The notes under the pieces were generated by a model, which made no database searches, was not told where the DNA came from, and saw only the letters and a list, made by a program, of their open reading frames with translations. Made by a program: the position numbers and the translations under genes. A DNA stretch of 64,000 nt, taken from positions 372,001-436,000 of the forward strand of contig NIVC01000012.1 in assembly GCA_002269645.1 (NCBI GenBank). Reading direction: 5' to 3'. Below, piece by piece: positions 16,175 to 63,850 of the stretch; within the stretch, counting starts at the first letter, position 1; each line of letters begins with the position of its first letter. Source of the stretch: Macrostomum lignano (lineage: Eukaryota).

Positions 16175-18556
16175 TCAGGTGCAGCTGAAGCTCAGCTGCG
16201 TTCTCTTCAGGCAAACAACAACAACAACAACAGAGTACGCTGCCAGTTCACAAAAGCAGCGTCAGATGGCGCGCTTCAAAGCTTGGGCGCGAACAAAAGC
16301 CGCACCGCCGGCAGAGTCCGGGGCGCCGGCGTCAGCCAGCAGACAGTCGACGTAGCGCCGAGTATTCGCCTGTCCCCGCCGGTAGGGTGCCTGCAACGTA
16401 AGTAGCAGCACCTCCTGCACCGGCTCCGGACAGTAGGCCTCGGCGCGGATGACGTGGCCTGCCAGCTGGAGTCGCCGACGGCGCAGCAGATCGCTAGGAC
16501 GGGCCAGGCCGGCGCGATGATAGAGCGCCGTGTTGGTGACTCGCTCGTTGCCGATCTTGAAGGCGGCGCGCAGCAGGCCAGCGTGCGCCGCGTCGACTTG
16601 AGCCTCGAGCGAGTCTGTCAGCGTCCAGGTCTCGGCGTTGTATAACAGGACGGTCTCGATCACCGCCTGGAACAGCGCCGCCCTCTGGCGGTCCGGTAGG
16701 GCCTCGGACTGCAGGACTGACCTTATAGAACGAAAGGCAGCCCAAGCAAGTCCTCGGCGACGCCGCAGATCCTCGCGGACGTCGGGAACCAGACCGCCGA
16801 GGTAGACGAACTGCTGACATCTTGGAAGCTCACTCGCCTGTCCGTCAGCGCCTCGGCAGAAGATTGCAGCCTCGGTGTCGTCCGGCACGCATAGCACGAC
16901 GGTCTTCTGCGTGTTGACCACCAGGCCGACGCTCGCCGCAACGGCAACCAGCCTATCCAGCTGTCGTTGGGCGCCCTCGACGGTCGAGGACAGCAGGGCG
17001 AGGTCATCGGCGTAGCCAAGCACGCTGAGCCGTCTCTCCGGTTGGCGTCGACCCACGCGTCGCCGCAGCAGGAAGCCGTCGTCGTTGGAAGGCAGAGCAG
17101 TCCGTAGCAATCCGTAGGCAAACATCAGTGTGAGATTTATCTTCTGCTGAGCAGTCTAGAGTAGTCTTGGCAAAGGTGACTTGTGCTACTGTCATTACCA
17201 TAGTCAGTGCTGGCGATCACACCGTTTGGGTTGAATAGGTGGCACATTCGGAACCACCAACCAATATGCTCTGCTAATGATTTCGAGCACGGCCGAAGGA
17301 AAACGTCATTGTCCCTATCGTGAGTGCTGAACGGCTGTAAGTTGTGATGCCATCGTATTGCACTATTGAGGTCGCCACCCGGTTCCTGACCACTGAGCAC
17401 CAGCCTGTAGTTCTCGTCCGCTACGCGCACCTGAAAGCCAGTGAAAGTCTGACGCATCAATGAGCCGTCAAATCGAGCTCCCTCAAAGGTGAACTTGCAG
17501 TTCCGGTCCTTGGTCATGTTTGACAGCCGCTCCAGACCTGCGAGATCGGTGAATTAGGACTTGCCCATCACTGTGGCGGCCGCTCAGCTCCTGTGGCCAG
17601 GACCGGTTTAAAGCGATGGTTGGCGGAGCAATGGTTGACATGTCGGAAACGAGCGTTCGGGTGGAATTATTCCGATCATGCTCGCGGCTTCCAACTGCTT
17701 GGGCTTGACAAGTAGTGCGAGTCGCTCTTGAACATCCAATTCTATTCCCTTTCGCTACTCTCCCACCCTCTTCCCGCTCTCCCTTCTTCATTCTCCTTCT
17801 GGGGTCTGTGAGCAGCACTGATTCGCTGTCACTGGATGTCCTGAGCTGACTGACTGAGTCTGCCTCCCTAATCGGTCTGTCTCTGCCTCCTGTCCTCACC
17901 AGTACCTGCTCCGTATATTACACAGGGCTCTTGAATTGCGTTGGATAATCACTCAGATGGGCTCTAAGTCACCCAGCCTCAGGCCGCTCACCCATCCAGT
18001 AGTTGCCGCTGGGATCTCCGAATCCCCTCACGTAGGTGTCCCAGTTCTGTGCGAACGAGAGGCTGTTATCCAGGTGTCGCTGGAAGACCACCTCAGAGCC
18101 GACCTCAGGACTGGGAACAGGGCTGGTTAGCGATCGGACACTGCTGAACTCTTTCTGAGAGCCGTCTTGCAAGCCATAGGGCGCGAATCGCACAGCCTTC
18201 CGGATGTAGGATGGGTCCGCAGAGATTCCTCTCCTGATATTCAAGCACCTGCGCCAGGTGTTGCACAGAAACACCAGCTGACCGGCAGTTCCATCGCTGG
18301 ACACTCGGCCCATGAGGAAGGCACCGAAGTTTTTTCTCAATATTCCACTTTCAGGAACCACTTTCAGTCCCGTGACACGTCGTTCGGCCACTCCAGTGAT
18401 ATTGAGGTCCAGTGAGAGCTCGAACTTATCATAGAATGGGTTGTATCTCAGGGTCGCAGGCTGCCTCACGAAGTCCACCGAAACCTCAGAGGCCGAGGTC
18501 CTCTGTGCGACGGACAGCCAGAGAACAAGGAGAAGCAGCGCAGAGCGGAGTTGCAT
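16175..18556 (-). pseudogene. Fibrinogen-related (FReD) gene, left copy; disrupted
   Basis: Exon 1 is 18556-17992 (ATG G|GTGAG); exon 2 starts at 17537 (GCAG|GT CTG GAG). The 88 nt between ..NGVIA and VCL give a +1 frameshift (premature stop at 17137). An RTE insertion at 16218-17115 splits the ancestral tail VCL|KRTQLSFSCT* (TGA at 16177-16175). Confidence 0.8.
16218..17115 (-). mobile_element. 5'-truncated RTE-type non-LTR retrotransposon (C-terminal RT/thumb)
   Basis: The ORF contains LGYADDLALL, LVVNTQKTVV and FVYLGG. 3' tail is (TTG)n. The 9-bp TSD AGGCAAACA lies at 16209-16217 and 17116-17124. Confidence 0.88.
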
Positions 18557-18635
18557 GGCTGGCTACTAAAGATTTTCTGCTTGGAAGCGCTTTGGACCTT
18601 GGAGACTGGATTCAGAGTGGCGAAGAGCGCTGCTG

Positions 18636-18645
18636 CTTATAAATA
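18636..18645 (-). promoter_or_regulatory. Candidate TATA box (TATTTATAAG) of the left FReD copy
   Basis: About 80 nt upstream of the ATG and conserved in both arms. Confidence 0.5.
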
Positions 18646-18948
18646 CTCGACAGCTCTGTGCTGCTAGTGGGCCACTGCATTTAAACAAATAGCTTTGATT
18701 TCGATATTCCGACAGCTTTTTACCACGTCATTTGATCAATAAATTTATGCATATCTCACAATTCGCAATAGTTTTTATTTATGTTTTGAATAGAAAATTT
18801 GTCTAAGAAAGTACCAGATTTTTCTGCTAATTGCTCGAGTTTTGTTACAAGTAGCTGTTATGTAGCGAAAATGTTGTGAGAAAGGCAAATTTGTGCTTCT
18901 TAGCAGACAAATTTTCGTTTCGATAAATAGCTCGTAATAATAATGATT

Positions 18949-20760: not shown

Positions 20761-21590
20761 TGTTGGTGGCTGGTGGCTGGCGTGCTCCTATGCTGCGACT
20801 ACATGTATGAAGAGAAAGAAAGTTGCAGCTGCAGGATAAAATATTTCGCCTCTTCCAAAGATTACAAGCTTCGATCCACTTTGATGTCGATGATCTAGAA
20901 GACTATTGAGACTGAAGTCGTAGTCACTGACTGCAGAAGTAGAAGTCGTAACAATGGCAACGAATACAAAAGTTGCCGAGTTCGACGTGGCCAAAGTGCG
21001 TATCAATGAAAAGCCTATGAAGAGAGAATGGAGCAATATCTTGTTAATACACTCGTCATAAATTTGGCACAAAAGCAAGCGAACCAGACCACAGTGATTG
21101 GAAATGACATTTATCAGTTGCTACGCAGAGGAAACTGTGCCCCGAAGCCGAAAATTGTTAAGCGAGTAGCAAAAACGAAATACGAGTATAAACTAAAAGC
21201 CATGAAAAAATGTAAAATCCGTGCGATCGCACTGAAATTGGCTTCATTTTAAGCCGGTTTGAGCGAGCCTTTTGGCCTCTGAAATTGCAATATCTTCGTC
21301 ACTCGGTAACAAACTGAAATTCGAAAAGAGAAATTCTGCTTAGGAGATAAATTTGATAATTTTCAATACGTTTTTGACTACATAGCAGCTACTTGTAACA
21401 AAACTCAAGCAATTAGCAGAAATATTTTCTTGAGTCAATTTTTTCAAGTCAAAAAAGTATAGTGAATTGTGAAAATATGCAGAATTTTATTGATCAAATG
21501 GTGTGTCAGAAAGCTGTCGGAATATTGAAATCACAGGCGAAATCACGCTGTTTGAATGCAGCGGCCCACTAGCAGCACAGAGATGGCGAG

Positions 21591-21600
21591 TATTTATAAG
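21591..21600 (+). promoter_or_regulatory. Candidate TATA box (TATTTATAAG) of the right FReD copy
   Basis: About 80 nt upstream of the ATG at 21680. Confidence 0.5.
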
Positions 21601-21679
21601 CAGCAGCGCTCTTCGCCACTCCGAATCCGATCTCCAAGGACCGAAGCGCTTCCAAGCAGAAAATCTTCAGTAGCCAGCC

Positions 21680-23086
21680 ATGCAACTCCGCTCTGCGCTG
21701 CTTCTCCTTGTTCTCTGGCTGTCCGTCGCACAGAGGACCTCGGCCTCTGAGGTTTCGGTGGACTTCGTGAGGCAGCCTGCGACGCTGATATACAACCCAT
21801 TCTATGATAAGTTCGAGCTCTCACTGGACCTCAATATCACTGGAGTGGCCGAACGACGTGTCACGGGACTGAAAGTGGTTCCTGAAAGTGGAATATTGAG
21901 AAAAAACTTCGGTGCCTTCCTCATGGGCCGAGTGTCCAGCGATGGAACTGCCGGTCAGCTGGTGTTTCTGTGCAACACCTGGCGCAGGTGCTTGAATATC
22001 AGGAGAGGAATCTCTGCGGACCCATCCTACATCCGGAAGGCTGTGCGATTCGCGCCCTATGGCTTGCAAGACGGCTCTCAGAAAGAGTTCAGCAGTGTCC
22101 GATCGCTAACCAGCCCTGTTCCCAGTCCTGAGGTCGGCTCTGAGGTGGTCTTCCAGCGACACCTGGATAACAGCCTCTCGTTCGCACAGAACTGGGACAC
22201 CTACGTGAGGGGATTCGGAGATCCCAGCGGCAACTACTGGATGGGTGAGCGGCCTGAGGCTGGGTGACTTAGAGCCCATCTGAGTGATTATCCAACGCAA
22301 TTCAAGAGCCCTGTGTAATATACGGAGCAGGTACTGGTGAGGACAGGAGGCAGAGACAGACCGATTAGGGAGGCAGACTCAGTCAGTCAGCTCAGGACAT
22401 CCAGTGACAGCCAATCAGTGCTGCTCACAGACCCCAGAAGGGGAGTGGGGAAGGAGAGCGGGCAGAAGGGCGAAGGAGAAAAGAATTTGATGTTTACAGT
22501 ACAGATCACGCCAAGGAATAATTCCACCTGACCGTTCGGTTTTGACCTTACGTGTGGCGGGGAACAAAGCAAGCAGCTGTCCAAAACCATCGCTTTAAAG
22601 CAGTGCCGGCCGCCACAGTTGATAGGCAATTCTTAACTCACCGATCTCGCAGGTCTGGAGCAGCTGTCAGCCATGACGAAGGACCGGAACTGCAAGTTCA
22701 CCTTTGAGGGAGCTCGATTTGACGGCTCACTGATGCGTCAGACTTTCACTGGCTTTCAGGTGCGCGGAGAAGACACGAACTACACACTGATGCTCGGGGG
22801 TGAGGATCCGGGTGGCGACCTCTATAATGACACACGACGGTTTCACAACCTTCAGCAGTTCAGCACTTACGATAGGGACAATGACGGCCTTCATGGGTCC
22901 TGCTCAGTAACACAAACAAAGAAAACCGGTTGGTGGTTCCGGTACTGTCACTTCTTTAACCCAAATGGTGTGATTGCTGAAATCCAAGTGGATGAAATAT
23001 TTTGCCTTGGATACTGCGTAGCAACAGACGTATTCGGCGCTTATATTTGCCTGACGAGAACGCAGCTGACCTTCAGCTGCACCTGA
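21680..23086 (+). CDS. Secreted fibrinogen-related domain protein (FREP/ficolin-like), join(21680..22244,22653..23086), 332 aa
   Basis: Signal peptide MQLRSALLLLVLWLSVAQ. FReD motifs: VFQRHLDNSLSF..WDTYVRGFG..GNYWMG|LEQLSAMT, FSTYDRDND, GWWFRYC..FNPNG. Phase-1 GT-AG intron; 565+434=999 nt with a stop. Confidence 0.9.
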
Positions 23087-26278: not shown

Positions 26279-26541
26279 TCAATAGTCACTACAATCGCTA
26301 TCTTCATCTCCACCGGCAGGGCTATCGTCAGAGCTGGCCCCACGATCGGAGTCGCTCTTCAACTCCGTGTTGGCCCTCGCTGCTTTTGCCTCCGCAGAAT
26401 CCGGATGAAACCAGGGAGCCTGCTTCGATTCACCAACGAAGGGAAACGATGCCTCTTTCGATTTCAAAATGCATCCGCGACTATCCAGACGTTTCAGCAG
26501 ACGGTTCCACATTTCGTTCACTCGCAGTAGGTGACTGTTTC
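26279..26541 (-). CDS. HELZ2: HELZ2-like helicase, terminal exon
   Basis: Acceptor AACGCAG|GA (phase 1). Completes LFIIG|NSHLLRVNEMWNRLL, the SF1 C-terminus; stop at 26279. Confidence 0.8.
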
Positions 26542-26689
26542 CTGCGTTAATTAATTGAAAAAAATTCTCATATAGGCTACTTGTAGTAGACGTTGAGGAT
26601 ATGAAAGAAACTTTTAAATTTCTTTTCCGATTTTTAGCGACGCAGAGAGAGAAGCAAAAATCCGCGCCACTTTTTTCAGCCTTTGAGGC

Positions 26690-27245
26690 GCCACTCTTGC
26701 AGCCTATGGGGCGCCACTCGTTCAGCCTATGAGGCGCCACTTTCCAAGCTTATGGGGCGCCACTCTTTCAGCCTATGGGGTCCACTTTCCAAGCTTATGG
26801 GGCGCCACTCTTTCAGCCTATGGGGCGCCACTTTTCAAGCTTATGGGGCGCCACTCTTTCAGCCTATGGGGCGCCACTTTCCAAGCTTATGGGGCGCCAC
26901 TCTTTCAGCCTATGGGGCGCCACTTTCCAAGCTTATGGGGCGCCACTCTTTCAGCCTATGGGGCGCCACTTTTCAAGCTTATGGGGCGCCAGTCTTGCAG
27001 CCTATGGGGCGCCACTTTCCAAGCTTATGGGGCGCCACTCTTTCAGCCTATGGGGCGCCACTTTCCAAGCTTATGGGGCGCCACTCTTTCAGCCTATGGG
27101 GCGCCACTTTCCAAGCTTATGGGGCGCCACTCTTTCAGCCTATGGGGCGCCACTTTTCAAGCTTATGGGGCGCCACTCTTTCAGCCTATGGGGCGCCACT
27201 TTCCAAGCTTATGGGGCGCCACTTTTCAAGCTTATGGGCGCCACA
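26690..27245 (+). repeat. 46-bp dimeric minisatellite GGGGCGCCACTCTTTCAGCCTAT + GGGGCGCCACTTTCCAAGCTTAT
   Basis: Direct; two alternating 23-bp subunits. Confidence 0.95.
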
Positions 27246-27310
27246 TACGGGTAGCTGGCTCCGACCTAGGACTATACCGGTAAATGCATAAGACAAAACT
27301 CAATATTATT

Positions 27311-27348
27311 TGCGACGCGTTTCGGCTAAAACTAGCCATCTTCAGGCA
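27311..27348 (-). ncRNA. Minimal type I hammerhead ribozyme motif
   Basis: UGC-CUGAAGA-U-GGCUA/GUUU/UAGCC-GAAA-CGCG-UC^GCA: core, stem II, palindromic stem III and 3-bp stem I. Confidence 0.75.
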
Positions 27349-27492
27349 CTATCGAACAGAATTTATTTCAACCTATTAAATACTGTGTAGACGACAAAAT
27401 CAGGTATTGAAAAGATATATATATATATATATTATATTGGAAAAAATTATCTACACAGTATTTAATAGGTTGAAATAAATTCTGTTCGATAG

Positions 27493-27530
27493 TGCCTGAA
27501 GATGGCTAGTTTTAGCCGAAACGCGTCGCA
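27493..27530 (+). ncRNA. Minimal type I hammerhead ribozyme motif (inverted partner)
   Basis: TGCCTGAAGATGGCTAGTTTTAGCCGAAACGCGTCGCA. Confidence 0.75.
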
Positions 27531-27999
27531 AATAATATTGAGTTTTGTCTTACTATTATCTGTTAAGAGTGCTTCTCTACCGCAAATGCATAAGACCTGC
27601 AGGCGTCCAGGGTAGCTAAAACTGTAAGTGGAATTTAAAACCTCACGAGAAACGGAGAGAAATCGTTACGTTCGCAAATTGAAACTTCACCTTCTGTAGT
27701 TATTGAAGCATAAAAAAATTGCTAGACGCTTTTTTTTGTCTTCGAGCTATGAATTTCAATTTAAGCTACTCAATAAGTTCCAATTCCAATGGTGTGTTGA
27801 AAGGCAGTGCTGCTCAAGTATTCTACTTGTTTTACGTCAATAAGCTACTTATTGTTGAGCGATTGGGGAGAAAATTCCCTACGACTGCTAACCTTTGAAT
27901 GACATTTTCCAGTGTACTTAGATAAAGCTAAGTCTCCGTAACTCAAACTCACACGCATATATTCAGCAATCTTAGTTACCTATTAACACCTTTTTGATT

Positions 28000-28810
28000 T
28001 GAGTGTGTGGCGCTATTTCATTCGAGGTTGTGGCGCCATTTCATTTGAGGTTGTGGTGCCAATTCAGTTGAGGTTTTGGCACCATTTCATTTGAGGTTGT
28101 GGCGCCAATTCAGTTGAGGTTGTGGCGCTATTTTATTTAAAGTTGTGGCGCTAATTCAGTTGAGGTTGTGGCGCTATTTTATTTGAAGTTGTGGCGCTAA
28201 TTCAGTTGAGGTTGTGGCGTCATTTCAATGGAGGGTGTGGCGCCATTAAAGTTGAGTTATTGGCGCCATTTCAGTTGAGGTTGGGGCGCCATTTCAACTA
28301 GAGGTGTGGCGCCATTTAAGTGAGTTAGCACCATGAGGTTGGCGCCATTTAATAGAGTGTGTGGCGCCATTTAATGAGTGTGTGGCAATTTAATTTGAGT
28401 GTGTGGCGCCATTTAATTTGAGTGTGTGGCGCCATTTAATTTGAGTGTGTGGCGCCATTTAATTTGAGTGTGTGGCGCCATTTAATTTGAGTGTGTAGCG
28501 CCATTTAATTTGAGTGTGTGGCGCCATTTAATTTGAGTGTGTGGCGCCATTTAATTGAGTGTGTGGCGCCTTTTCATTTAAGTGTGTGGCGCCTCTTTAT
28601 TTGACGTTGTGGCGCCAATTCATTCAAGGTTGTGGCGCCATTTCAATGGAGTGTGTGGCGCCATTTCATTTGAGGTTGTGCCGCCAATTCATTCAAGTTT
28701 GTGGTGCCATTTCAGTAGAGGTTGTGGCGCCATTTCAATTCGGCTTGTGGCGCCATTTTAATTGAGTTTGTGGCGCCATTTCATTTGAGATTGTGACGCC
28801 ATTTTCTGAG
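28000..28810 (+). repeat. Degenerate 21-bp minisatellite GTGTGGCGCCATTTAATTTGA
   Basis: Direct; the centre is homogeneous and the flanks are degenerate. Confidence 0.92.
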
Positions 28811-29475
28811 CTTGTGTATGAGTGCGTGCCGCGCTTAATTATGTGCCAAGGAGTTATCGGAATGGGCAGATTTGCCACAACGCTGGTTGTAGGACAATGG
28901 CCATTATGCAGCCATAAAAATAAAGATTGTAGCAGACTGGAGAAGCTGCTCGATGGCCAGCGACCGGGGGACATGGGGCGAGGCGATTAATTATTTATGG
29001 CGGTGTTTTTTTCTGGATACAAGCTGGAGTATATTCAATATAGTCGTATTCAATATTTTTCGTATTGGCTGGACTGGCTTCAGTGGCTGAGCGTAGGGTT
29101 GCATTAAGAGACTTGACCAGTCAGTCCATTTGCAACCCCTTCTGTTTAAGCTATATATAAAATTACGCCACCTATCGGGACTGCAAGCTATTAGAAAAAT
29201 TTAGCCAAGCGCTGTGAGAACTATTTGACAATGGCTCAGCATTAAAAGCTTTATGAGACTGCCATGCGATGCGATCACACTGGGGGGGGTTAAGGTTAGC
29301 TGCTACCTGTGACAGATCTGACACTTTTTTGTCAACCCTTTCTGGGAAATTTTTGTCCAGTGTCTAGCTAAACAACTAGAATATATGAATAATAAATTGC
29401 ACGAAAAATACTGCTATACAGTTTCTGACTAAACTCTGGTGAAATCCAGGGGTGTAGCTCGTAATAAGGATTTTT

Positions 29476-30146
29476 CATGGGGGCTTTAGGACTAGGGGCT
29501 TTAGCACCAGAGGATTTAGCACCAGGGGCTTTAGCACCAGGGGCTTTAGCACCAGGGGCTTTAGCACCAGGGGCTTTAGCACCAGGGGCTTTAGCACCAG
29601 GGGCTTTAGCACCAGGGGCTTTAGCACCAGGGGCTTTAGCACCAGGGGCTTTAGCACCAGGGGCTTTAGCACCAGGGGCTTTAGCACCAGGGGCTTTAGC
29701 ACCAGGGGCTTTAGCACCAGGGGCTTTAGCACAAGGGGCTTTAGCACCAGGGGCTTTAGCACCAGGGGCTTTAGCACCAGGGGCTTTAGCACCAGGGGCT
29801 TTAGCACCAGGGGCTTTAGCACCAGGGGCTTTAGCACCAGGGGCTTTAGCACCAGGGGCTTTAGCACCAGGGGCTTTAGCACCAGGGGCTTTAGCACCAG
29901 GGGCTTTAGCACCAGGGGCTTTAGCACCAGGGGCTTTAGCACCAGGGGCTTTAGCACCAGGGGCTTTAGCACCAGGGGCTTTAGCACCAGGGGCTTTAGC
30001 ACCAGGGGCTTTAGCACCAGGGGCTTTAGCACCAGGGGCTTTAGCACCAGGGGCTTTAGCACCAGGGGCTTTAGCACCAGGGGCTTTAGCACCAGGGGCT
30101 TTAGCACCAGGGGCTTTAGCACCAGGGGCTTTAGCACCAGGGGCGC
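29476..30146 (+). repeat. 15-bp minisatellite ACCAGGGGCTTTAGC (about 44 almost identical copies)
   Basis: Direct; source of the APGAL/PGAKA/LVLKP pseudo-ORFs. Confidence 0.98.
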
Positions 30147-30225
30147 CAATACTAGGGGCACCAAACTCTTGGCTACACTGCAGGTAAAGCCTGCAAAGCC
30201 AGTAAATATTCTGATGAGAACCCAC

Positions 30226-30565
30226 CGATAATGAAGAGGCCACGCCTCGCTCTTGTAAGAGCCACGTTGATCTGGTTTTCGTCCGTAATGAAGCCGAGAA
30301 ACTTGAGCTCCCAGCTCAGCACACTGGTTCTCGGTATCAGGAATCTGGGACACGACCGAACCAGCGAGAGGATAACGTAGTCAAACTCGCTGCCCTGACA
30401 GGCGATCACCGTTTTCACTGTTGGCATCGGCAATTTGAGCTGACGAATCCGAGTTGAGATCGCAGACACCTGGTACCGATACTGCGAGATGATGGCTACA
30501 GATGAGGCTGGATTGGCTCTGCGAACTCCGGTTAAGCGCAAGTAGATCTCTTTGTAAACTTGCAC
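30226..30565 (-). CDS. HELZ2: HELZ2-like helicase exon (SF1 motifs V-VI, AAA_12-type)
   Basis: AG|GTG at 30565; VAIISQYRYQV..TVIACQGSEFDYVILSLVRS..NQINVALTRARRGLFIIG; donor G|GTGGG at 30226. Confidence 0.9.
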
Positions 30566-30812
30566 CTGTTTATCAAGAAAAGACTTGTTTGTTAATAACA
30601 ACTGCTCACACTCCGATTTGATGGCGGTGTTCTAAATGCTGCCGAATGTATCTTTGTTTGCATTTTTGGCTGGTTACTAGGTCGTACAACAAGGTCAATG
30701 AAATACACTCTGCAATCAGGGGCACAGTTCATAACTTCATAGCTTGCGAGCTGGAAAAGTTCGCAAGCTCTACAAACATTCTAACTGAATGACCCATTCA
30801 CGCAAGACTTAC

Positions 30813-33400: not shown

Positions 33401-33559
33401 GTACACGACAAGTTATTCGTGATCTAGCGGTCCCGTTACCTTAGCACTAATGCAATTCGGAAATCACCAGAGCTACAAAGTTTTCCGGAGGACTACTGCA
33501 CGAATACATCAACGGTTTGCTGCGATTTCTCAAATGCCTATCTCGAAGTCTTTATATTA

Positions 33560-34470
33560 CAGCACAATATCCGATATTTTTGGTCTCAATCGGGATTTCG
33601 TCACTGTTTTTGAGAACTGACAAAATTCGGGACTGAAGTAGCTGCTCTGTTAGACAAGTGACCATTATGGCGCGAAGCATTTGCGAGATTAAAGACTCAA
33701 AGACCCGTGAAGTCTCGATCATTGGGACTTTGACTACCGGATTGCAATAATCGTGAAGCGACACGTCCACTCTGTCCTTCACTTCAGTTGGCGTCTCGTC
33801 TTCCGGCTTGAGAACGTGTGGATACTGAGCGTCTTCAAAATGTCACTGAAGACCCGAATAATTGGCACTTGTTACCAGCTTATCCAGCAGGTATCGAAAC
33901 AAATCCAAGAGCGGTTCGACGGTAAAGCATACAAGACTTGTCACGGATTTTCACTTGCAGATATTCTTGCCCACCTACGGTGGTGGAGACGCATCTTTAG
34001 GACGGGTGTAGCCGTAACCGCGATAGTCACTTCTTAGTTTTTCATATCGAAAGTCGATTTTAACGAATAACGAAAGGGCCAGTCGTCGATCATAGTATCG
34101 TCAAACACTCGTCTGAATGAATTTTTTGGAGACGTTATCATCCAGCTCATTGATCCTTGAGAACCAGTAAGATATTAGAACTCCCGTGAGCGTCTTGCCG
34201 GTGCTGTGATAAATCAGATAATGAAAAAGTCAATCGAATACGAGACTAAATGGGTTATTTATGTGCTGTGCATGGAAAATAAAACCAAATTAAAAGTGCA
34301 CCAAGTAACTGAAAAAAATGACGAATAATGACGCGTAACTTAGTCTCACAAGAATTTATCATAGGTTCGGAGAACAGAAAAACAAAAAAAGGCAAAGGCG
34401 AAAATATAAAATTGAAAACTCTAAAAGGAGGAAAAAATAATTTAATAACTATACATTAGCATCAATATGC
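33560..34470 (-). repeat. Indel-riddled second copy of 31870-32850 (helicase exon plus adjacent intron)
   Basis: Colinear with 31870-32850, differing mostly by single-base deletions and insertions. Confidence 0.85.
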
Positions 34471-35710: not shown

Positions 35711-35899
35711 CTTAACTTCTTACAGGCTCAAATTTTTGTATGTCTCGGCTGCGTCGCCGACTGCTCTGTCGCAACTTTTAACTCTTCTGTAATCACAAGT
35801 GTAGCGACAAGACTTTACGGCAAGTCCTCACTGAATGCTTGGGGTCGTCCTAAAATGCGATACTCGGCTCTGTTTAAATCCGATGACGCAGATATGGGA

Positions 35900-37999
35900 A
35901 CATGAGAGAACTTTCCAAAAAGAAAAAGAACTTTCTCTTGTCAAAATATCAAATGACATGATGATATTCTCATCAAGATCACGGCAGGCTCATTCGGTCT
36001 CATCGTAAATTAGCAATGGTTCGAGAGCTCCGATCTGAGCAGAGGCACAGTGGCGCCGTTTTTTAGCCACTCGGCAACGGGCTCTGGGAGGGTCCTCCTT
36101 CTTGGGAATCGCACTCGAATCGGTAGTTTCCGGCTTTTTCAGAAATTCTCGCCACGGCAAAATTAGCTTTGAGAATGAATTCCTCTACCAAACAGCTAGC
36201 TTCGAAGTTTTGATCGACGGGAGGCTCACCGGTTCTTGGCGACTGGCAGAAGGCTGCCTCACCGAGTCGATCCAGTCGCCATCGAATGGAAATCTTGCAG
36301 AGGAATTTCAGCATGCTAGCAACTTCTTTGTCATCTCTACGTTCGGGTGACTCATTCTGAGTAAGCACTTTGGTAACTTGTGACTTTTTCAAATTGCAAC
36401 GAACTTTAATCACGGTAGGAAGAATTCTTTTAGATTCTATGCTGAATGAACTGCTGGCCTTATCAAATCGGACAGTGAAAAACACTGATAAACACTTTCT
36501 TGACTGATTGGCAACTAAGCTGAGCCAGTTCAGAGACAGACTTTGCGGAAATAAGTGTGCAGAGTAACAGCATCGTTGCCTTCAATTTCAATGAGCTCTT
36601 GTGCTGTTCTGTCCAAGGCAGAGATTATTCTCAATGTAGTAGGACGCATCGGTCACGTGGACTCCAATTTCGTAGACATTCTCGGAAATGGCTGCAAGTG
36701 ATAAAGCATCGTCGAACATTCGCGTCGATCGTCATCGATAGTGATTGCCAGAAGATAAAGCTGCGAACAGATCTTCTCGATGCCGGGCTCGCTGAGTCAT
36801 TTGCTGACCTCACTGGCAACTTTGGATACTTCTGTCTTCAACTTGGCCTCCATTTCTTCGTCGGCTTTTATGAACGGCAATGAAAATTGAACTGACAACA
36901 ATAGATCGCGCATTGGTTCGAAATCTTTCTTGTTTATTATGGCGACAACGTGTCCTTTCGGATACGGATACCCGACCTGCCAGAGTGAGTAGCACACCAG
37001 AAAGAGCTTGTCGCAGTTATCCTTGTTAACTTTCACTGCCGCTCTAGGCAGAAAAATTGGCACATTACTCGTATTCGGATCTACTCGTAGCTTGACGGAA
37101 AACAGAGTCACATAGTTAGAATTGGCGAATCGCAATCGTTCTTCGTATTCCATGTCGGCGCGTTGACTTTCCTTGCCGATGTGTTCCTTGAACTTTTTAG
37201 TCACTTCGGCATCGAAGCGTTGAGCATGCAAGTTGTCGTACGTGATTCTCGGCACAGTGCCACAAAGAGGCTCCATATGAGCATAGCTACCGGGCACTAT
37301 GCGGCATAGCAACAGTTTATGCTTCAACTTGTGCGCCTGCTGTTCTATGGCGACCACTCGACCGAAAAGTTGTTTATCTGAGCCGCGATCTTCCGGGTTT
37401 AACAGATTCACGTAGCAAGCGTCGCCGTCTGCCGCACATGCACAGGCGGCCCTGCTTGGCAGAATAATTCTGGTAATGGTCTCGTCTGAGACCGGCTGGG
37501 CCCAAGAATTGAAAGAGTCGGCCAGGTGAACAATGCACAGCACAGTTGTTCGTTTGCCAATGAATTTTTCAGGTCGGTACAATCTGTAAGCTGGGATTAC
37601 TTCGTAACGAGTCTTGATGATGCCTTCAACTGGTCGGCCAACTCTTTGTTCGATAACACGCACCACAACCAGATCGTTGTATTCATACTTCCGGTTGTTG
37701 TTTAGTAGGACAATTTTTTTACAGTCCTTAAATTTACCCTCAGGAATGCCGACTGTCTGCCCGTTCTGTTCAAATTTAATCCTGCAGAGACAGTGGTTTT
37801 CTGAGTTATCAGACAGAAGCTTATCCGCTCTCTCAGTTTTTGTTTGGGCTTTAATAACTACTTCATCAGTAGTAGCGAAGTCGCGCAGTAAGTTATAAAT
37901 CTCTTCTAGCGACTGTTGCGGCCTTAGACGCCGCCAGCCACGGTGGTCGTAGTAGGGGTATGCGTCTTCATCGTCGCACATGCCGCCAACTTGGCGATA
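35900..37999 (-). CDS. HELZ2: HELZ2-like gene, large exon with OB/CSD region and RNB (RNase II) domain; several frameshifts after 36800
   Basis: Acceptor TTCCAG|TAT at 37999. LFLVCYSLWQVGYPYPKGHVVAII; then across shifting frames HREDL, AITIDD, FDDALS, YEIGVHVTDA and EASCLVEEFILKANFAVA, all RNB hallmarks. The 3' boundary is approximate. Confidence 0.8.
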
Positions 38000-41893: not shown

Positions 41894-44800
41894 TCAAACT
41901 TGCATGCTTCGATAAACCAGCATTTGCTCAGCAGTCACGGAGGGCGCCAATTCTTTGGCGCAGCTAAGCAGCATGGCCTGAGTCAGGCAACAATTCACAC
42001 TCAGCTCGTCCTCCGATCCGCTGTCTATGGCGGAAACCGCCTCTCGCAAGGCCAGATCGGCGGCATTGGACACCACCGACATGACATCAGCACCAGTGAC
42101 AAGCGACGGCAGAGCGGCAGCCAGCGTCTCAACGTCAACATCCGGTGCGCACGTGCGTCGCCGTAATTGAGCCCTGAAAAGGGCCGTTTTATCCTCCAGA
42201 CTTTCGGCCGGCGCAATTAGCAAGGCCTGATCGAATCGGCCAGGCCGAAGGAGAGCGCGATCTAGCAGGTCGGCTCGGTTGGTGGCCCCAATGACGAAAA
42301 CAGCAGCGTCGGCCGTTCTGATGCCATCAAGTTCGGCGAGCAGCTGGGAAACGATTCTGTCAACCGCACCGCTTCCGCCGCCGCCGCCACGAGCCGGCGC
42401 AATCGAGTCCAATTCGTCGAAGAATACAACGCAAGGCGCAAGACGAATTGCGTCAGCGAACAGTGCCCGGACGTTCGCTTCGGATTGACCAACGTACATG
42501 TTGACGAGCTCGGGACCTTTCACGCTCAGGAAGGACAGCCCCAACTGGCTGGCCGCCGCCCTGGCCAGCAGGGTCTTGCCAACGCCAGGCGGACCGTAGA
42601 GCAGCAGGCCGCAGCGTCGGTGCCGTCGCAGCTCCGGCCGTTTCAATGGCGCCTCCACTGTCGCTAAAATTTCAGCCACGGCCGCTTCCTGACCACCGAC
42701 GTCTTCCCAGGCTACAGCGGCGGTTGTAGGCAGACTCGACGCGCCGAGAGAAGCAGCTCGAGCTTTCAGCGTCGCATCCAGGGCGGCAGACAGGGCAGAG
42801 GGACGAATCTGACCTTCGATATTTGTTGTAAGCTTGCTTCTAGTAGCGGTAAGATCAATAGTCTCTTCAGCAGAATCTTGGTAGCCAAATTCCGACAAAC
42901 GAGCGCGCCGTCTCAGCGCCCAGAGCTCGGCGGCGTTGAAACCGACGCTGCGCTGAGTTAAGCGGTCCAGCAATGCGGCGTCGCTTTCCAGACCAGCGCC
43001 GGCATTTAGCAGAGCTTGCCGACGTTCCGACTCGGTTGGCGGTGGCACGGCCAGGTCTAGCTGGAACAGGGCCAGCAAGCCCGCGTCCAACTGGCTGAGT
43101 GATTGACAGGTGCCAATTATGACTGACGGCTGCCGGCCTTGACCGTCTGCGGGACAATGACAATTTTTTTGGCTTCAAATACGATTTTTTAAAAGCATTT
43201 AAACTAGGCCGCTGTAAATCACGTGTGAGCGAGTGTAACACCTGTGTGCTCCAACCAACCCTGCTGCTGTCGGCCAGTCTGATTCAGCAACCGAGCCAAC
43301 GCAGTCACAGCCGCCGGATCGGCACCCGACAAACCGTCCCGTTTTCTAGCTAACAAGCCGACATCAGTGAGTAGCAGCAGTCTCGGCAGGGCTGCGTCAC
43401 CGGACAGGATGGTGGAAAAATCTTCCTCGCCATAGTCAGACGCAGAGCCAAGAGCAGACCCGTCGCTACTACTGACCGAACCAGGCAGTTGGACGGTTAA
43501 ATTTTCACATCGAGCAATTCGGACGTGTAAACTGAGACGGTCAGCTACGGCTAGAGCGGCGGCAGCTTTGCCGCAACCGCTGGGCCCGTGCAGGAGCACA
43601 GTGACTGGTGGAAGACTATTCTCAATCGAAGCGTCAACGCATCGACGCAGCAAAGTGGTCAGTCGGTTAACAAAACCTGCGGCTAACGGTAGCGATGGCG
43701 AAGGATAAAGACGCGGTGCGTAGGATACTACAGCCGATTTGTAATTGTTGTTGGCTGCTTGCACTCGGAGGCTGGTGAACTCCAAGCCGGCCAGTATTGG
43801 CCCGGCAAGGTGCTCAGAGCCGGAGCTGACTTCGTCACCTGTTCAATTAGGAAAGAATTATTAATTACGTGAATATTTTTATTCATTGCGACTTGTCAAC
43901 CTTGGATTGATGCTTCAAAACTGTAAAAATAAAACTGGGGTTGTAGCTTAGTGGTCAGAGCGTCGGACTCACGACTTGAAGGTCGCGGGTTCGATTCTTG
44001 ACTCACTCGAAACAATTTGTATGTCCTTGAGCGAGACACTTAACTCTGCATTGCAATTCAGTTTACCCAGCTGTAAAATGGGTGCCAGCATTAGCTGGGG
44101 TAATTGAGGGTGTGAGTGGCGACCCCCCAGTCCTTGGACTGAACAGCCATACGCAGCCTTCAGATGCGCCGCGCAATAGCTGCGGCTGAGCTGTCGGTGC
44201 ACATTTGCCCTATTAGAAAACAAAATCATAGCATATCACAGAAATATAATTACTCGCAAGAGGTCCAAGCACCCTGGCACAATGCCTTCGGTGACACCAT
44301 CCCAAAACCAAGCTCCGTGTCATATGGAACTTTTGTGAAGCTCCGTGTTATCCGTGTTCATGGTAAATATACTGACAAAAAATCAATCGGACTACTTACT
44401 TAGTAAAAGCAAGTAGTATTAATAAAAAATCTACCATTACTTTCGGCTTTTTCTAAACTTGACCGATTAAAATAGGCTTTTTTGAGTATTATAAATTTCT
44501 TGGCTTAAATCTTACCGTATAGTACAGCACAGTGCCAGTCGCAAGCTCGTGAGTCGCAGCATCTGTTTGGCATGCAGGCACAGTTACAAGATCGCCCAGA
44601 TACAAGCACTGCTGGGTTGAGAACAGCTCAAACAAACTGGACTTGTATTCATATCCGATAGGGTAGTGTGGCGAAGGAGACACTGCTAACTGAATGCTTT
44701 GTGCTCGCTTAGCTGATGCAGTATCGTTGGTTGAGCACTGCTCAATTCTAAGCCTCACTGAAGGGCAGTAAATATGACATTTAACGACGTCAGCTTGTCT

Positions 44801-46500: not shown

Positions 46501-46830
46501 AATATGTTAATGTTTTTAATTGCTAAATTTAGATAAATAGTCTTATGTAAAAAATACAATTAGAATAGACAGACATGATAAATTTAAGAAGCTAAATATC
46601 CAATGATAAAACTAGGAAGTTAAAAAAACAGTATTTTTAAGTGAAATCTATAAAACCTGAATGCTGAAGATAAATAAAATAGTATGTAAGTTGAACTTTT
46701 GAAGTTTATTTGATATTATCATCGACCTGAAGTCTTACAGATACTTTAACACTTTGAAAAATTTAATATTTTGAAATTCACTGTCACCATTGCTTGCTCT
46801 GGGTTTACTTTTTATTATCTGACTTAAATG

Positions 46831-47527
46831 CAAGGACGACTTAAGTAGAAGGACGGGAAACCTCGTTTCTTAGAAAAGTTTTGAAGGCACTTTTTCCCGA
46901 AAAAATACACTACGGAGATAGGAAGTTTTCATTTTTTCAGCACAAAAATTGTTATTGCGTTTGATAGGAGGCAGAACCAGTGTTCATCTTTTGATATGTT
47001 GTGCCTTTTTTATTGCTCTATCGATATTTATAAAAGTTTTCGTTCAGAAAATTAGGATTCTATGTTAATTTTTTATTCTACGTATATTTCCTGTATCTAA
47101 AAATCACAAAAATGCATGACACAGCTCCAATATTTGGTTTTATGAACCTATTTTATCATCTCTGTTACAAATATTTGCTAACAGTCGGGTAAGAATGATA
47201 AAAAAGACTCATGAAGCTAAAGAGCCGAGCCGTGGCATTCTAATGTATTTCAAGCACAAGACGCGCGAAAATATACGTAGAATAAAAAATTAACATAGAA
47301 TCCTAATTTTCTGAACGAAAAGCTTTATAAATATCGATAGAGCAATAAAAAAGGCACAACATATCAAAAGATGAACACTGGATCTGCCTCCTATCAAACG
47401 CAATAACAATTTTTGTGCTGAAAAAATGAAAACTTCCTATCTCCGTAGTGTATTTTTTCGGGAAAAAGTGCCTTCAAAACTTTTCTAAGAAACGAGGTTT
47501 CCCGTCCTTCTACTTAAGTCGTCCTTG
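46831..47527. mobile_element. Long-TIR (foldback-like) non-autonomous element with hAT-like ends
   Basis: Near-perfect ~259-bp arms (46831-47089 and 47268-47527); termini CAAGG/CCTTG; 8-bp TSD CTTAAATG. Confidence 0.88.
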
Positions 47528-47887
47528 CTTAAATGTAGAAGTAAGAATAGAAAACTTAAAGTTCTGCTTTATTCTCAACTCACCTAACGTGACCGATTCC
47601 TTGAAAACGCCGCTTTTGAATCGGTACGAAAACACAAAGACTTTTAACGTGCAAAATGTTTCGCTGTTTCGCAAATGTTTCGCAAAAGGATCGCTTTCCT
47701 TAAACTATTTGACTACTAAAATGCCATGGTAGCTATAGGTGATCATTAATTAAGATCGGCCCAGGGCAGGTTGACCTGTTAAACAACTTGACAAGACATA
47801 AACACCCAAGACGAGGTGGCCCATATGTTCTAAAACAGGGGTTGGCGAAATTTTACCTCAAGGGCCAGATACAGAGAACCTAGCGCA

Positions 47888-60199: not shown

Positions 60200-60950
60200 T
60201 TTTTCCCTTCTAGTCCCCACTTCCTCTCTTCCCCTCTCCCCACCCTCTTTGCTCACCTCTCTCTCTCTCTCTAATCTTCCTCTCTACCTCTCTCCTTCCC
60301 TCTCTCCTCCCCTCACTCCTCCTCTCTCTCCTCCCCTCTCTACCTCTCTCCTCTCTTCTCTCCTCTCCCCTCTCCCCATTGTTACGTCTTCTGCTCCGAC
60401 CTAGAGCTGCTACATTTAAGTAAGGAAGACAATAGTTGTAACTTAGCGGTTCGAGCCATCTTTTCGCTTGATGAACTTCTCTTGGGATGCATGTCGTAAC
60501 TACTTAATTATAAAATAATGTATTGTGCCCTAGACAACAAAACAATCGGCTCGGGGCATACTGTGTCTTTGCGCCAAGTGTGTTTTCTGTCAATATACAA
60601 CACCCATCTTCTCTACCTCTCTCCTCCCCTCTCTCCTCCCCTCTCTCCTCACCCTCTCTACCTCTCTCCTCCCCTCTCTCCTCACCCTCTCTACCTCTCT
60701 CCTCCCCTCTCTCCTCACCCTCTCTACCTCTCTCCTCCCCTCTCTCCTCCCCTCTCTCCTCACCCTCTCTATCTCTCTCCTCCCCTCTCTCCTCCCCTCT
60801 CTCCTCCCCTCTCTCCTCACCCTCTCTACCTCTCTCCTCCCCTCTCTCCTCACCCTCTCTACCTCTCTCCTCCCCTCTCTCCTCCCCTCTCTCCTCCCCT
60901 CTCTCCTCACCCTCTCTACCTCTCTCCCCTCTCTCCTCCCCTCTCTACCT
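60200..60950 (+). repeat. Pyrimidine-rich repeats (CTCTCTCCTCCC / CTCTCTCCTCACCCTCTCTAC)
   Basis: Direct; two tracts at about 60200-60380 and 60605-60950. Confidence 0.92.
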
Positions 60951-61041
60951 TGCAAAGTTTTTTTTATGAAAATTAAATATGTGCTTTAATTAGAGATGGA
61001 CCATTTTCAGGCTAATTTGCCTATCAAATTGATTTTAAGAA

Positions 61042-62620: not shown

Positions 62621-62624
62621 CCTC

Positions 62625-62655
<31 letters not shown>

Positions 62656-63850
62656 TCTCTCCTCCCCTCTCTCCTCACCCTCTCTACCTCTCTCCTCCCC
62701 TCTCTCCTCCCCTCTCTCCTCCCCTCTCTCCTCACCCTCTCTACCTCTCTCCCCTCTCTCCTCCCCTCTCTACCTTGCAAAGTTTTTTTATGAAAATTAA
62801 ATATGTGCTTTAAATAGAGATGGACCATTTTCAGGCTAATTTGCCTATCAAATTGATTTTAAGAAATTTAGTATAACTATATATTTATATAAAACTCTTA
62901 GAATTCAGCTTTACTGAAATGAGAGACTTTCTCTCCTGATGAGCTCGGAAATTCGATACTATAAGAAACCCGAATAAGGGTTAGAAAATGACCTTTCCAA
63001 CTTCCATATTGGTAGCTGGAATAAACTGGAGCAAGAATTGAAAAGCTCTCATCATCATAATCAACAATGGGCTTTCATATGAAACATCAGGTCGAAGGTC
63101 TGATGAGCAATTCGGTAAATTGAATATTTTTTAGCAGAACACCGAGGGAACTCTTTTTTCCAAATGGACAGTTCGTGACCTGTTTTAGATTAAAATTTGA
63201 TTGCTACAATATAGAAAACCTATGCTTACATGTGGAAACTATCTATCCTTTTCTCTCTCTCTCTCATATATAGCTTACATAACTAAATTTCTGTAACTTT
63301 AAAGGCTGATTAATTATTTATATGGAATAATTTGTCCGCACTTACGATGAACCCCAGATGAGGCCAAACAGTATTTAAACTGGAATTGTGGTAGATTGTA
63401 CCAATCGCTCCCCTTGATGGCCATCGACACATAAAAAATAGGCCAGCTGCAATTACCATAGGCAATTATAGAAGTCTATGGTCACAAGTAGAGTCTACAA
63501 CCTACTACTAACAATGCTTTGTGAACGTTGATAATTAAAAGTAAAATAGGTTTTATACATGGAGCATAGTTCGTCTCATTTATCTATGGTCAAGACTGCT
63601 GCTTCTTATCTTTGAGCTTTGATTCTTATATGCATAAAACATGGTTCAAGTAATCCACGCCGAGACAAAACGCCTATCAAGGCCGCCTCGTCGCCAAGCC
63701 GAAAATTGTACGAACCTTTCACACCGAAAAGCATGCTAAAGTGCGCTGTCTGCAAGTGAACGACGTTACGCCTAATTATAGTACTCGCTACACGAAAGAG
63801 CAGTTCATGCGTCAACAGAAGTCCCTCGGTGACATCCTAGTCGGATCTGA

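What the first reader, a model, noticed from the sequence alone, without database searches (positions are those of the whole stretch)
27282..27596. Perfect 103-bp inverted repeat carrying two back-to-back hammerhead ribozyme motifs inside the last intron of the HELZ2-like gene
Seen: zero-mismatch arms, each with CUGAAGA, a GGCUA/UAGCC stem II, GAAA and a palindromic ACGCGU stem III with a GUC cleavage site; a ~31-nt tail; and a 13-bp direct repeat at the flanks. Established: Penelope-like elements carry minimal hammerheads in their pLTRs, often insert with an inverted 5' pLTR, and minimal forms are thought to cleave as dimers. Inference: a recent, extremely truncated PLE insertion. One ribozyme lies on the pre-mRNA strand. 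Its antisense arm is transcribed first, so the 103-bp duplex could switch cleavage off while creating an intronic dsRNA hairpin (an ADAR/Dicer substrate) in a putative antiviral gene.
Basis: partly seen in the sequence, partly recalled or inferred. Interest (0 to 1): 0.7.

Follow-up and report, generated by a model that had tools for sequence, protein, structure and literature searches.

The report
Truncated Penelope-like retroelement hairpin in intron
A 289-bp scrap of a Penelope-like retrotransposon, inserted as two identical head-to-head copies that each carry a minimal hammerhead ribozyme motif, sits in the last coding intron of a HELZ2-like gene of the flatworm Macrostomum lignano; this kind of footprint is already described, so it is ordinary rather than new.

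Summary
There are two 103-nt arms with 100% complementarity, a 58-nt spacer, a 31-nt one-sided tail and a 13-bp flanking duplication. Each arm carries CUGAAGA / 5-bp helix II / GAAA / palindromic ACGCGU / C17.

A full minimal-hammerhead descriptor hits the window three times and hits 300 shuffles zero times. The third hit lies in the 3' region of a real Penelope-like element (PLE) fragment elsewhere in the window. Rfam's hammerhead models miss both the arms and this positive control.

More than 120 metagenome contigs carry the same core. Their helix I covaries. Close opposite-strand pairs have the same head-to-head layout in 11 of 12 cases. Two of those pairs show an 11-12-bp duplication plus a 35-36-nt tail at one end only.

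This matches published PLE hallmarks: an inverted 5'-truncated copy, a 30-40-bp tail and two reverse-transcription start sites. The host is Macrostomum lignano. The element lies in a GT-AG intron (26542-30225, minus strand) whose splice junction restores a Upf1-like helicase motif.

On the pre-mRNA the antisense arm is made first, and the predicted 103-bp duplex (-196 kcal/mol) should bury the ribozyme.

Not shown: any other genomic copy, the parent PLE, cleavage, or small RNAs.

Verdict: a new member of a known kind, of low-to-moderate interest.

The parts
27282..27294 (.). Left copy of the 13-bp target-site duplication AAATGCATAAGAC. Its last 6 nt (TAAGAC) are also the first 6 nt of the left arm, giving a junction microhomology.
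   Evidence: (D3)
27289..27391 (-). Left arm: an inverted, 5'-truncated, tail-less copy of the element's 3' region. Its sense strand is the window's minus strand, which is the pre-mRNA strand.
   Evidence: (I1, 103 nt, 100%)
27314..27345 (-). Minimal type-I hammerhead motif on the minus (pre-mRNA) strand, with C17 at 27314.
   Evidence: 37.3 bits, E = 1.9e-8
27392..27449 (.). 58-nt AT-rich spacer (83% A+T) with an 18-nt TA run from 27415. It is not palindromic outside the TA run and its origin is unexplained.
27450..27552 (+). Right arm: the sense copy of the same 103 nt.
   Evidence: I1
27496..27527 (+). Minimal type-I hammerhead motif on the plus strand: CUGAAGA, extra U, 5-bp helix II GGCUA/UAGCC with loop GUUU, GAAA, palindromic ACGCGU, and C17 at 27527.
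27553..27583 (+). 31-nt 'tail' present only on the plus-strand copy. It is read as the stretch between two reverse-transcription start sites.
   Evidence: PMC11167929; the same one-sided 35-36-nt tails occur in L025 and L118
27584..27596 (.). Right copy of the 13-bp target-site duplication.
   Evidence: D3
26542..30225 (-). Host intron (GT at 30225-30224, AG at 26543-26542) that contains the element. It is the last coding intron of the HELZ2-like gene.
   Evidence: The spliced peptide ...GLFIIG|NSHLLRVNEMWNRLL aligns without a break to Upf1/NAM7.
30226..30631 (-). Upstream exon encoding the AAA_12 helicase C-terminal domain.
   Evidence: PF13087, E = 5.8e-23
26282..26541 (-). Last coding exon, running to the stop codon.

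Best explanation
This is a young, extremely 5'-truncated insertion derived from a Penelope-like retroelement (PLE). It carries only the hammerhead-bearing pLTR/5'-leader region, present twice in head-to-head orientation.

Proposed mechanism (inferred). The PLE endonuclease cut both strands of the target with a 13-bp stagger. Each 3'-OH then primed reverse transcription of the same kind of template RNA.
- On the top strand, synthesis began at the proximal start site, helped by 6 nt of pairing (TAAGAC with GUCUUA). This gave the tail-less inverted arm.
- On the bottom strand, synthesis began 31 nt further downstream. This gave the arm with the tail.
- Both cDNAs ended at the same 5' position and were joined through a 58-nt AT-rich filler containing a self-complementary (TA)n run.

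The hammerheads are relics of the element's own RNA biology. They are of the minimal, dimer-dependent kind.

In the host pre-mRNA (minus strand) the antisense arm is transcribed before the sense ribozyme. The 103-bp perfect duplex therefore forms, and the ribozyme is almost certainly silent. The locus is most likely a neutral intronic passenger that can form long dsRNA.
For: Shown:
- The geometry of arms, tail and duplication.
- The full min-HHR descriptor gives 3 hits in the window against 0 in 300 shuffles.
- The only other hit (62521-62549) lies 3' of an ORF with CCHH and GIY-YIG-like motifs. That ORF's homologues carry RVT_1 plus GIY-YIG. So PLEs with this ribozyme type live in this genome.
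- More than 120 metagenome contigs share the core. Their helix I was not part of the search pattern, and it covaries at 6 of 6 pairs (covariation 0.304 against 0.121; 0 of 500 shuffles reach it).
- A covariance model built from 39 of those contigs scores both arms at 37.3 bits, E = 1.9e-8. The next best hit in the window scores 11.6 bits.
- 11 of 12 close opposite-strand pairs in those contigs have the same minus-left/plus-right layout.
- L025 has an 11-bp duplication with a 36-nt tail on one side. L118 has a 12-bp duplication with a 35-nt tail on one side.
- The pre-mRNA-strand hairpin folds at -196 kcal/mol, z = -24.8. A single arm shows no special stability.

From the literature:
- min-HHR traits, and 'dual min-HHRs 100-700 bp apart on opposite strands' in Schistosoma (PMC4209133).
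- Inverted 5'-truncated copies and a 30-40-bp tail at one end (PMC8557442).
- A PLE protein cleaves and extends both DNA strands, and the tail equals the sequence between two RT start sites (PMC11167929).
Against: - No Rfam hammerhead family matches, even at E <= 10.
- Contiguous helix I is only 3 bp.
- No second copy of the arm, tail or spacer exists in the 64-kb window. No other M. lignano DNA could be fetched. Homology to an autonomous PLE is therefore not shown.
- The 27-codon ORF opening at the AUG formed by A9-U-G10.1 has no protein relative.
- The covariance model is partly circular, because 19 nt of the search pattern came from this element.
- The distance from the ribozyme cut site to the insertion ends (25 and 56 nt) is shorter than in the relatives (60-90 nt).
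- The shared inner end of both arms and the 58-nt spacer are not explained by the model.
- Self-cleavage is untested, and published min-HHRs cleave poorly in vitro.
Confidence: 0.75

Rival explanations
1. The whole hairpin (arm-spacer-arm-tail) existed before this insertion, or arose from one cDNA rather than two. Either a non-autonomous master copy was reverse-transcribed once from the tail end, or a single cDNA snapped back on itself for second-strand synthesis. In both cases there was no independent priming on the two DNA strands.
For: Several metagenomic pairs are near-perfect palindromes right to a small centre: L065 has a 0-nt spacer, L118 10 nt, and L097 a palindromic centre. That is what snap-back synthesis would give. 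Both arms of the window element stop at the same inner base.
Against: The spacer is not palindromic outside the TA run. No priming microhomology is visible at the inner junction (read directly). The outer ends differ by a discrete 31-36-nt tail in three independent insertions. That fits two defined RT start sites (PMC11167929) better than an arbitrary stop of snap-back synthesis.
Confidence: 0.15
2. It is a MITE or foldback DNA transposon whose terminal inverted repeats happen to contain hammerhead-like words.
For: There are long perfect inverted repeats flanked by a direct duplication. The window carries DNA-transposon remains, namely a piggyBac-like ORF.
Against: The inverted repeats do not reach the right end, because a 31-nt asymmetric tail intervenes. 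A 13-bp duplication is longer than usual for cut-and-paste families. The full hammerhead descriptor is absent from 300 shuffles. The same asymmetric layout recurs in hammerhead-bearing pairs elsewhere.
Confidence: 0.03
3. It is an assembly artefact or a local replication-fork template-switch palindrome, not a mobile-element insertion.
For: Perfect palindromes are a known failure mode of long-read assemblies (general knowledge). The arms are 100% identical.
Against: An exact 13-bp duplication brackets the unit with an asymmetric tail. The palindrome is only 264 bp and has a unique spacer. Neither feature is expected from chimeric reads or fork switching.
Confidence: 0.03
4. The hairpin has been co-opted. 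It may serve as an intronic hpRNA or endo-siRNA/miRNA-like precursor. Alternatively it may act as a ribozyme switch that cleaves the HELZ2-like pre-mRNA when the duplex is unwound or edited.
For: The predicted duplex on the pre-mRNA strand is very stable. Generic plant miRNA-precursor models align to it at 89 bits against a gathering score of 195. A homodimer of the sense arm is predicted to be 7.7 kcal/mol more stable than two monomers.
Against: All Rfam miRNA hits are far below their thresholds and merely reflect a long hairpin. There is no conservation evidence. The zero divergence between arms and the perfect duplication suggest the element is too young to have been selected. One transcript carries only one sense ribozyme, so the dimer needs a second pre-mRNA.
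Confidence: 0.05

Closest known systems
Minimal hammerhead ribozymes of metazoan Penelope-like elements (Cervera & de la Pena 2014, PMC4209133)
   Same: The type-I core CUGANGA...GAAA...UH is present. There is one unpaired nucleotide between A9 and G10.1, a G10.1-C11.1 closing pair and a palindromic helix III (ACGCGU). Helix I is short. In another flatworm (Schistosoma mansoni) these motifs occur as opposite-strand pairs 100-700 bp apart, mostly as solo or truncated copies.
   Different: Helix II is 5 bp (7-8 bp in the main S. mansoni families) and contiguous helix I is 3 bp. The two copies are 100% identical, which suggests a very recent event. No link to an RT/EN ORF of the same family was found.
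Canonical PLE insertion architecture and the PAc (Poseidon, Anolis carolinensis) in vitro system (PMC8557442; PMC11167929)
   Same: An inverted 5'-truncated copy abuts the sense copy, and a 30-40-bp tail sits at one end only. The tail is interpretable as the interval between two RT start sites, with both target strands cut and extended. The AUG sits at the start of helix II, with the cut site 26 nt downstream, as reported for PAc.
   Different: Only about 134 nt of the element is present, with no ORF and no full pLTR. The RT start sites lie 25 and 56 nt after the cut site, against about 85-92 nt in PAc. The tail is not AC-rich. The AUG-led ORF has no detectable relative.
LINE-1 twin priming (5' inversion)
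   Same: The second target strand anneals to the RNA by a few bases (here TAAGAC with GUCUUA) and primes a second cDNA, giving an inverted segment inside one target-site duplication.
   Different: There is no poly(A). The two segments are the same region rather than adjacent regions. The enzyme implied is a GIY-YIG/telomerase-like RT, not an APE-type LINE.
Animal non-LTR retrozymes (tandem hammerhead repeats giving circRNAs)
   Same: It is a small, non-coding, hammerhead-bearing sequence thought to be mobilised by PLEs.
   Different: The copies are inverted, not tandem. Therefore no unit-length RNA flanked by two sense ribozymes can be excised or circularised.

Membership tests
Hammerhead ribozyme, PLE-type minimal (min-HHR) | Catalytic core C3U4G5A6N7G8A9 ... 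G12A13A14 ... U16.1H17 | tested here: met
   CUGAAGA ... GAAA ... UC on both arms
Hammerhead ribozyme, PLE-type minimal (min-HHR) | [quoted passage not shown] | tested here: met
   Extra U, then GGCUA/UAGCC (5 bp, loop GUUU); criteria taken from PMC4209133
Hammerhead ribozyme, PLE-type minimal (min-HHR) | Palindromic 15.2-16.2/loop 3, allowing an intermolecular helix III | tested here: met
   ACGCGU. The self-duplex is predicted at -8.9 kcal/mol, and the homodimer at -24.1 against 2 x -8.2 for two monomers.
Hammerhead ribozyme, PLE-type minimal (min-HHR) | Helix I pairing across the cleavage site (published 4-5 bp; 2 bp in D. virilis) | tested here: inconclusive
   Only 3 contiguous pairs (UGC/GCA). 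A possible distal 7-bp stem UUCGAUA/UAUUGAG appears in the predicted fold. The covariance model marks 3 of 6 helix I pairs as unpaired.
Hammerhead ribozyme, PLE-type minimal (min-HHR) | Site-specific self-cleavage after H17 | not testable with these tools
   Needs transcription and cleavage assays with C3/G8 mutants.
Rfam hammerhead families (Hammerhead_1, _3, _II, HH9, HH10) | Covariance-model score at or near the gathering threshold | tested here: not met
   No hammerhead hit at E <= 10 in 381-nt or 156-nt searches. The PLE-associated control at 62521-62549 is missed as well.
Penelope-like element insertion | Inverted 5'-truncated copy adjacent to the sense copy | tested here: met
   103-nt arms head-to-head; the same orientation in 11 of 12 related pairs
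Penelope-like element insertion | 30-40-bp tail at one end only, inside the target-site duplication | tested here: met
   31-nt tail 27553-27583 and a 13-bp duplication; the same in L025 (36 nt, 11 bp) and L118 (35 nt, 12 bp)
Penelope-like element insertion | RT (telomerase-like) plus GIY-YIG endonuclease ORF | tested here: not met
   The element is 289 bp and non-coding. The short AUG-led ORF has no relatives. This is expected for an extreme 5' truncation.
Penelope-like element insertion | Sequence homology to the pLTR or 5' leader of an autonomous PLE in the same genome | not testable with these tools
   Only this 64-kb window of M. lignano was readable. There is no second copy in it. The PLE fragment at 61042-62621 belongs to a different family.
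Animal non-LTR retrozyme | Tandem direct repeats, each with a sense hammerhead | tested here: not met
   The copies are inverted, and no direct repeat of the arm exists.
MITE / foldback DNA transposon | Terminal inverted repeats reaching both ends, with a short fixed duplication | tested here: not met
   A 31-nt asymmetric tail separates the right arm from the duplication, and the duplication is 13 bp.
miRNA precursor families (Rfam MIR8007, MIR4208, MIR5070 ...) | Score at the gathering threshold | tested here: not met
   89.5 bits against 195, 73 against 140, and 56 against 100. These are generic long-hairpin matches to plant families.

The most novel reading that the evidence does not exclude
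The perfect 103-bp intronic duplex is processed into small RNAs (or edited) and acts in trans against the parent PLE family. A retroelement fragment trapped in a HELZ2-like gene would then have become a source of anti-retroelement dsRNA. A milder version is more likely: this insertion, together with L025 and L118, is an in vivo record of both RT start sites being used on opposite DNA strands in one integration event. That would support a symmetric, dimer-driven double target-primed reverse transcription for PLEs.
Probability: 0.07. Interest if true: 0.6.

Novelty: new member of a known kind. Interest (0 to 1): 0.25.

Why it matters
Taken alone it matters little. Thousands of such minimal hammerheads, including opposite-strand pairs, are already documented in flatworms and other animals.

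Its modest value is as a clean, undecayed example:
- The arms are 100% identical and the 13-bp duplication is perfect.
- One end has the tail and the other has 6-nt priming microhomology.
- The natural product therefore looks just as the 2024 in vitro PLE work predicts, with both strands primed and two start sites about 30 nt apart.

It also shows that Rfam models do not detect this ribozyme class, so genome annotation will miss it. Finally, it places a long perfect dsRNA-forming hairpin inside a gene of a family that in vertebrates restricts retroelements. That can be tested with existing M. lignano RNA data.

Tried and rejected
1. Rfam at gathering and at E <= 10 on the whole element and on one arm found no hammerhead family. 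The only hits were sub-threshold plant miRNA hairpin models. The control PLE hammerhead was also missed, so this test is uninformative.

2. I tested the idea that the AUG formed by A9-U-G10.1 starts the PLE ORF, as in PAc. It also has no hit among 1.84 billion representatives. In the metagenomic relatives the same AUG runs into a stop after about 3-10 codons. I rejected it as evidence.

3. I tried to sample more M. lignano DNA through repeated transposon ORFs (piggyBac-like and LINE RT). Neither is on record.

4. The LINE RT at 16265-17155 (YADD motif) is not a PLE.

5. tblastn of 20 PLE proteins against the 120 metagenome loci gave nothing at 1e-5 and only a weak GIY-YIG remnant in L098. Those hammerheads are mostly solo or truncated.

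6. Contigs of the PLE homologues P0002 and P0005 (L122-L132) contain no min-HHR under my descriptor, so they were uninformative.

7. The spacer and tail have no relatives in the window or in the loci, apart from TA microsatellite matches.

8. The literature search for Macrostomum plus Penelope found nothing specific.

Full report
**Observation.** The repeat finder reports arms 27289-27391 and 27450-27552, 103 nt each and 100% complementary, 58 nt apart. It also reports the exact 13-mer AAATGCATAAGAC at 27282-27294 and 27584-27596. Between the right arm and the right 13-mer lie 31 nt (27553-27583) that have no partner on the left. The RNA hairpin is predicted at -190 kcal/mol against -56 for shuffles, z = -31. 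No other copy of the arm, tail or spacer exists in the window.

**Is the hammerhead real?** The loose pattern CUGANGA...GAAA...GUH is at chance level: 4 matches against 4.4 expected. Rfam finds no hammerhead family even at E <= 10, either on the whole element or on one arm. Its only hits are generic long-hairpin matches to plant miRNA models, far below threshold.

I therefore wrote the published min-HHR criteria of Cervera & de la Pena 2014 (PMC4209133) as a strict descriptor:
- helix I of at least 3 bp across the cut site;
- CUGANGA;
- zero or one extra nucleotide;
- helix II of at least 4 bp closed by G10.1-C11.1;
- GAAA;
- a palindrome starting at A15.1;
- H17.

It hits the window three times and hits 300 dinucleotide shuffles zero times. 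Two hits are the arms. The third, at 62521-62549 (+), lies 3' of an ORF (61042-62096) with a CCHH finger and a GIY-YIG-like motif. That ORF's database homologues carry RVT_1 plus GIY-YIG domains. It is therefore a genuine Penelope-like element (PLE) fragment with the same ribozyme architecture: an extra nucleotide, a 5-bp helix II, a palindromic AUAU and a 3-bp helix I. Rfam misses that control too, so its silence says nothing here.

**Relatives elsewhere.** The fetched loci total 535 kb and hold only six ORFs of 200 aa or more, so they look like eukaryotic non-coding DNA.

In 39 distinct sequences of the same length class, helix I was not part of the search pattern. It shows compensatory changes at all six pairs. 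The covariation score is 0.304 against 0.121 in shuffles (0 of 500 reach it), and the slid controls are far lower. A covariance model built from those 39 sequences scores both window arms at 37.3 bits, E = 1.9e-8. The next best window hit scores 11.6 bits. This score is partly circular, because 19 nt of the pattern came from the element itself.

**Architecture.** In those contigs, 11 of 12 close opposite-strand ribozyme pairs are arranged minus-left/plus-right, as here. Gapped alignment gives arms of 103-321 nt at 72-94% identity.

Two pairs show the full signature:
- L025 has an 11-bp duplication GCACATGTCTT abutting the left arm and lying 36 nt beyond the right arm.
- L118 has a 12-bp duplication GACCAAGACCAA abutting the right arm and lying 35 nt beyond the left arm.

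This is the published PLE insertion pattern: an inverted 5'-truncated copy next to the element and a 30-40-bp tail at one end only (PMC8557442). Frangieh et al. 2024 (PMC11167929) showed that a purified PLE protein cuts and extends both DNA strands. They also showed that the tail equals the sequence between two adjacent internal RT start sites.

The window element fits that model directly. The top-strand 3' end ...TAAGAC can pair with GUCUUA in the RNA and prime the tail-less inverted arm. The bottom strand primed 31 nt further downstream. That two-strand priming is my inference, not something shown here. A snap-back or master-hairpin origin remains possible. The identical inner ends of the arms and the 58-nt AT-rich spacer are not explained. 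TA runs occur in the spacers of 5 of 11 pairs, which I record but did not test.

**Host and gene.** The window is contig NIVC01000012.1 of GCA_002269645.1. A cluster mate of its OB_HELZ2 exon is UniRef100_A0A1I8GQ32 from Macrostomum lignano.

On the minus strand lie these domains:
- OB_HELZ2: 36800-37999;
- part of RNB: 36066-36581, profile positions 71-218 of 326;
- AAA_11: 32549-31379;
- AAA_12: 30631-30226.

A GT at 30225-30224 and a polypyrimidine-AG at 26543-26542 join ...GLFIIG to NSHLLRVNEMWNRLL. This aligns without interruption to yeast and human Upf1, and the exon then runs to a stop codon near 26282. The element therefore lies in the last coding intron (26542-30225).

There is one caution. 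The C-terminal third of RNB was not found. Residues 656-1139 of the 90%-identical paralogue protein have no match in the window. A decayed duplicate of a helicase exon sits at 33555-33842. The gene may therefore not be intact.

**Consequences.** The pre-mRNA is the minus strand, so the complement of the right arm (antisense) is made first and the sense ribozyme (cut site at 27314) last. The pre-mRNA-strand fold is dominated by the 103-bp duplex at -196 kcal/mol, z = -24.8. A single arm is no more stable than its shuffles.

The two ribozymes lie on opposite strands and cannot dimerise with each other. A sense-sense homodimer through ACGCGU is predicted to be favourable, at -24.1 against 2 x -8.2 kcal/mol, but it needs a second transcript. 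Cleavage of the host pre-mRNA is therefore unlikely, while long intronic dsRNA is likely. Any processing or editing of that dsRNA is untested.

**Verdict.** This is a young, extremely truncated, head-to-head PLE-derived insertion carrying minimal hammerheads. It is a new member of a well-described kind. Three things remain open: its functional speculation, the untestable 'match elsewhere in the genome', and the uninformative Rfam test. No step needed referral.

Noticed in passing
window 61042-62621 (+), flanks 60801-61041 and 62622-62865: A 5'-truncated Penelope-like element fragment. It has an ORF with a CCHH finger and a GIY-YIG-like motif, and its homologues carry RVT_1 plus GIY-YIG. Its own minimal hammerhead is at 62521-62549, 72 nt before the 3' junction. 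It is inserted in a 12-bp-unit minisatellite and is flanked by an unusually long direct duplication of about 241-244 bp at 96% identity.
   Followed up: partly
metagenome loci L005, L024, L109, L118 and window 27415-27432: (TA)n runs lie in the spacer between the head-to-head arms in 5 of 11 pairs. A self-complementary microsatellite could bridge two cDNA ends, or it may only reflect AT-rich background. I ran no statistical test.
   Followed up: partly
metagenome loci L025 (1176-1211) and L118 (704-738, minus strand): The one-sided tails of these two independent insertions resemble each other (AACACAAC...GATGACGCAC). This recalls the AC-rich RT-initiation stem-loop described for the Anolis PLE. 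The window's tail is not AC-rich.
   Followed up: no
window 17782-18687 and 21549-22454: A 906-nt inverted duplication at 98% identity, 2.9 kb apart. Each arm encodes the same 197-aa ORF with the start of a fibrinogen C-terminal domain. Weaker outer arms lie at 17213-17570 and 22620-22977.
   Followed up: no
window 26730-27250 and 27993-28084; 29478-30200: The host intron is packed with minisatellites. A 23-bp array ends 37 nt before the insertion site. A related array in the opposite orientation shares the GGCGCCAC core. A 15-bp array (reading KPLVL) starts just after the splice donor. PLEs are reported to favour microsatellite targets.
   Followed up: no
window 33555-33842 (-) and 35831-36581 (-): A decayed duplicate of part of the AAA_11 helicase exon is present. 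The RNB domain is cut short at profile position 218 of 326. The paralogue protein A0A1I8GQ32 is 90% identical over 475 aa, but its residues 656-1139 have no counterpart in the window. The HELZ2-like copy may be rearranged or decaying.
   Followed up: partly
window 46803-47089 and 47269-47555: Another inverted repeat, 287-nt arms at 94% identity and 179 nt apart, of unknown nature. It has no minimal hammerhead under my descriptor.
   Followed up: no
window 16265-17155 (-); 53976-55548 (+): A LINE-type RT fragment (YADD motif) and a frameshifted piggyBac-like transposase (DDE_Tnp_1_7). Neither is on record as a called gene in the protein collection.
   Followed up: partly
window 43937-44009 (+): The only Rfam match at gathering score is a marginal tRNA (30.1 bits against a threshold of 29) with several mispaired acceptor-stem positions. 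It is possibly a tRNA-derived repeat.
   Followed up: no
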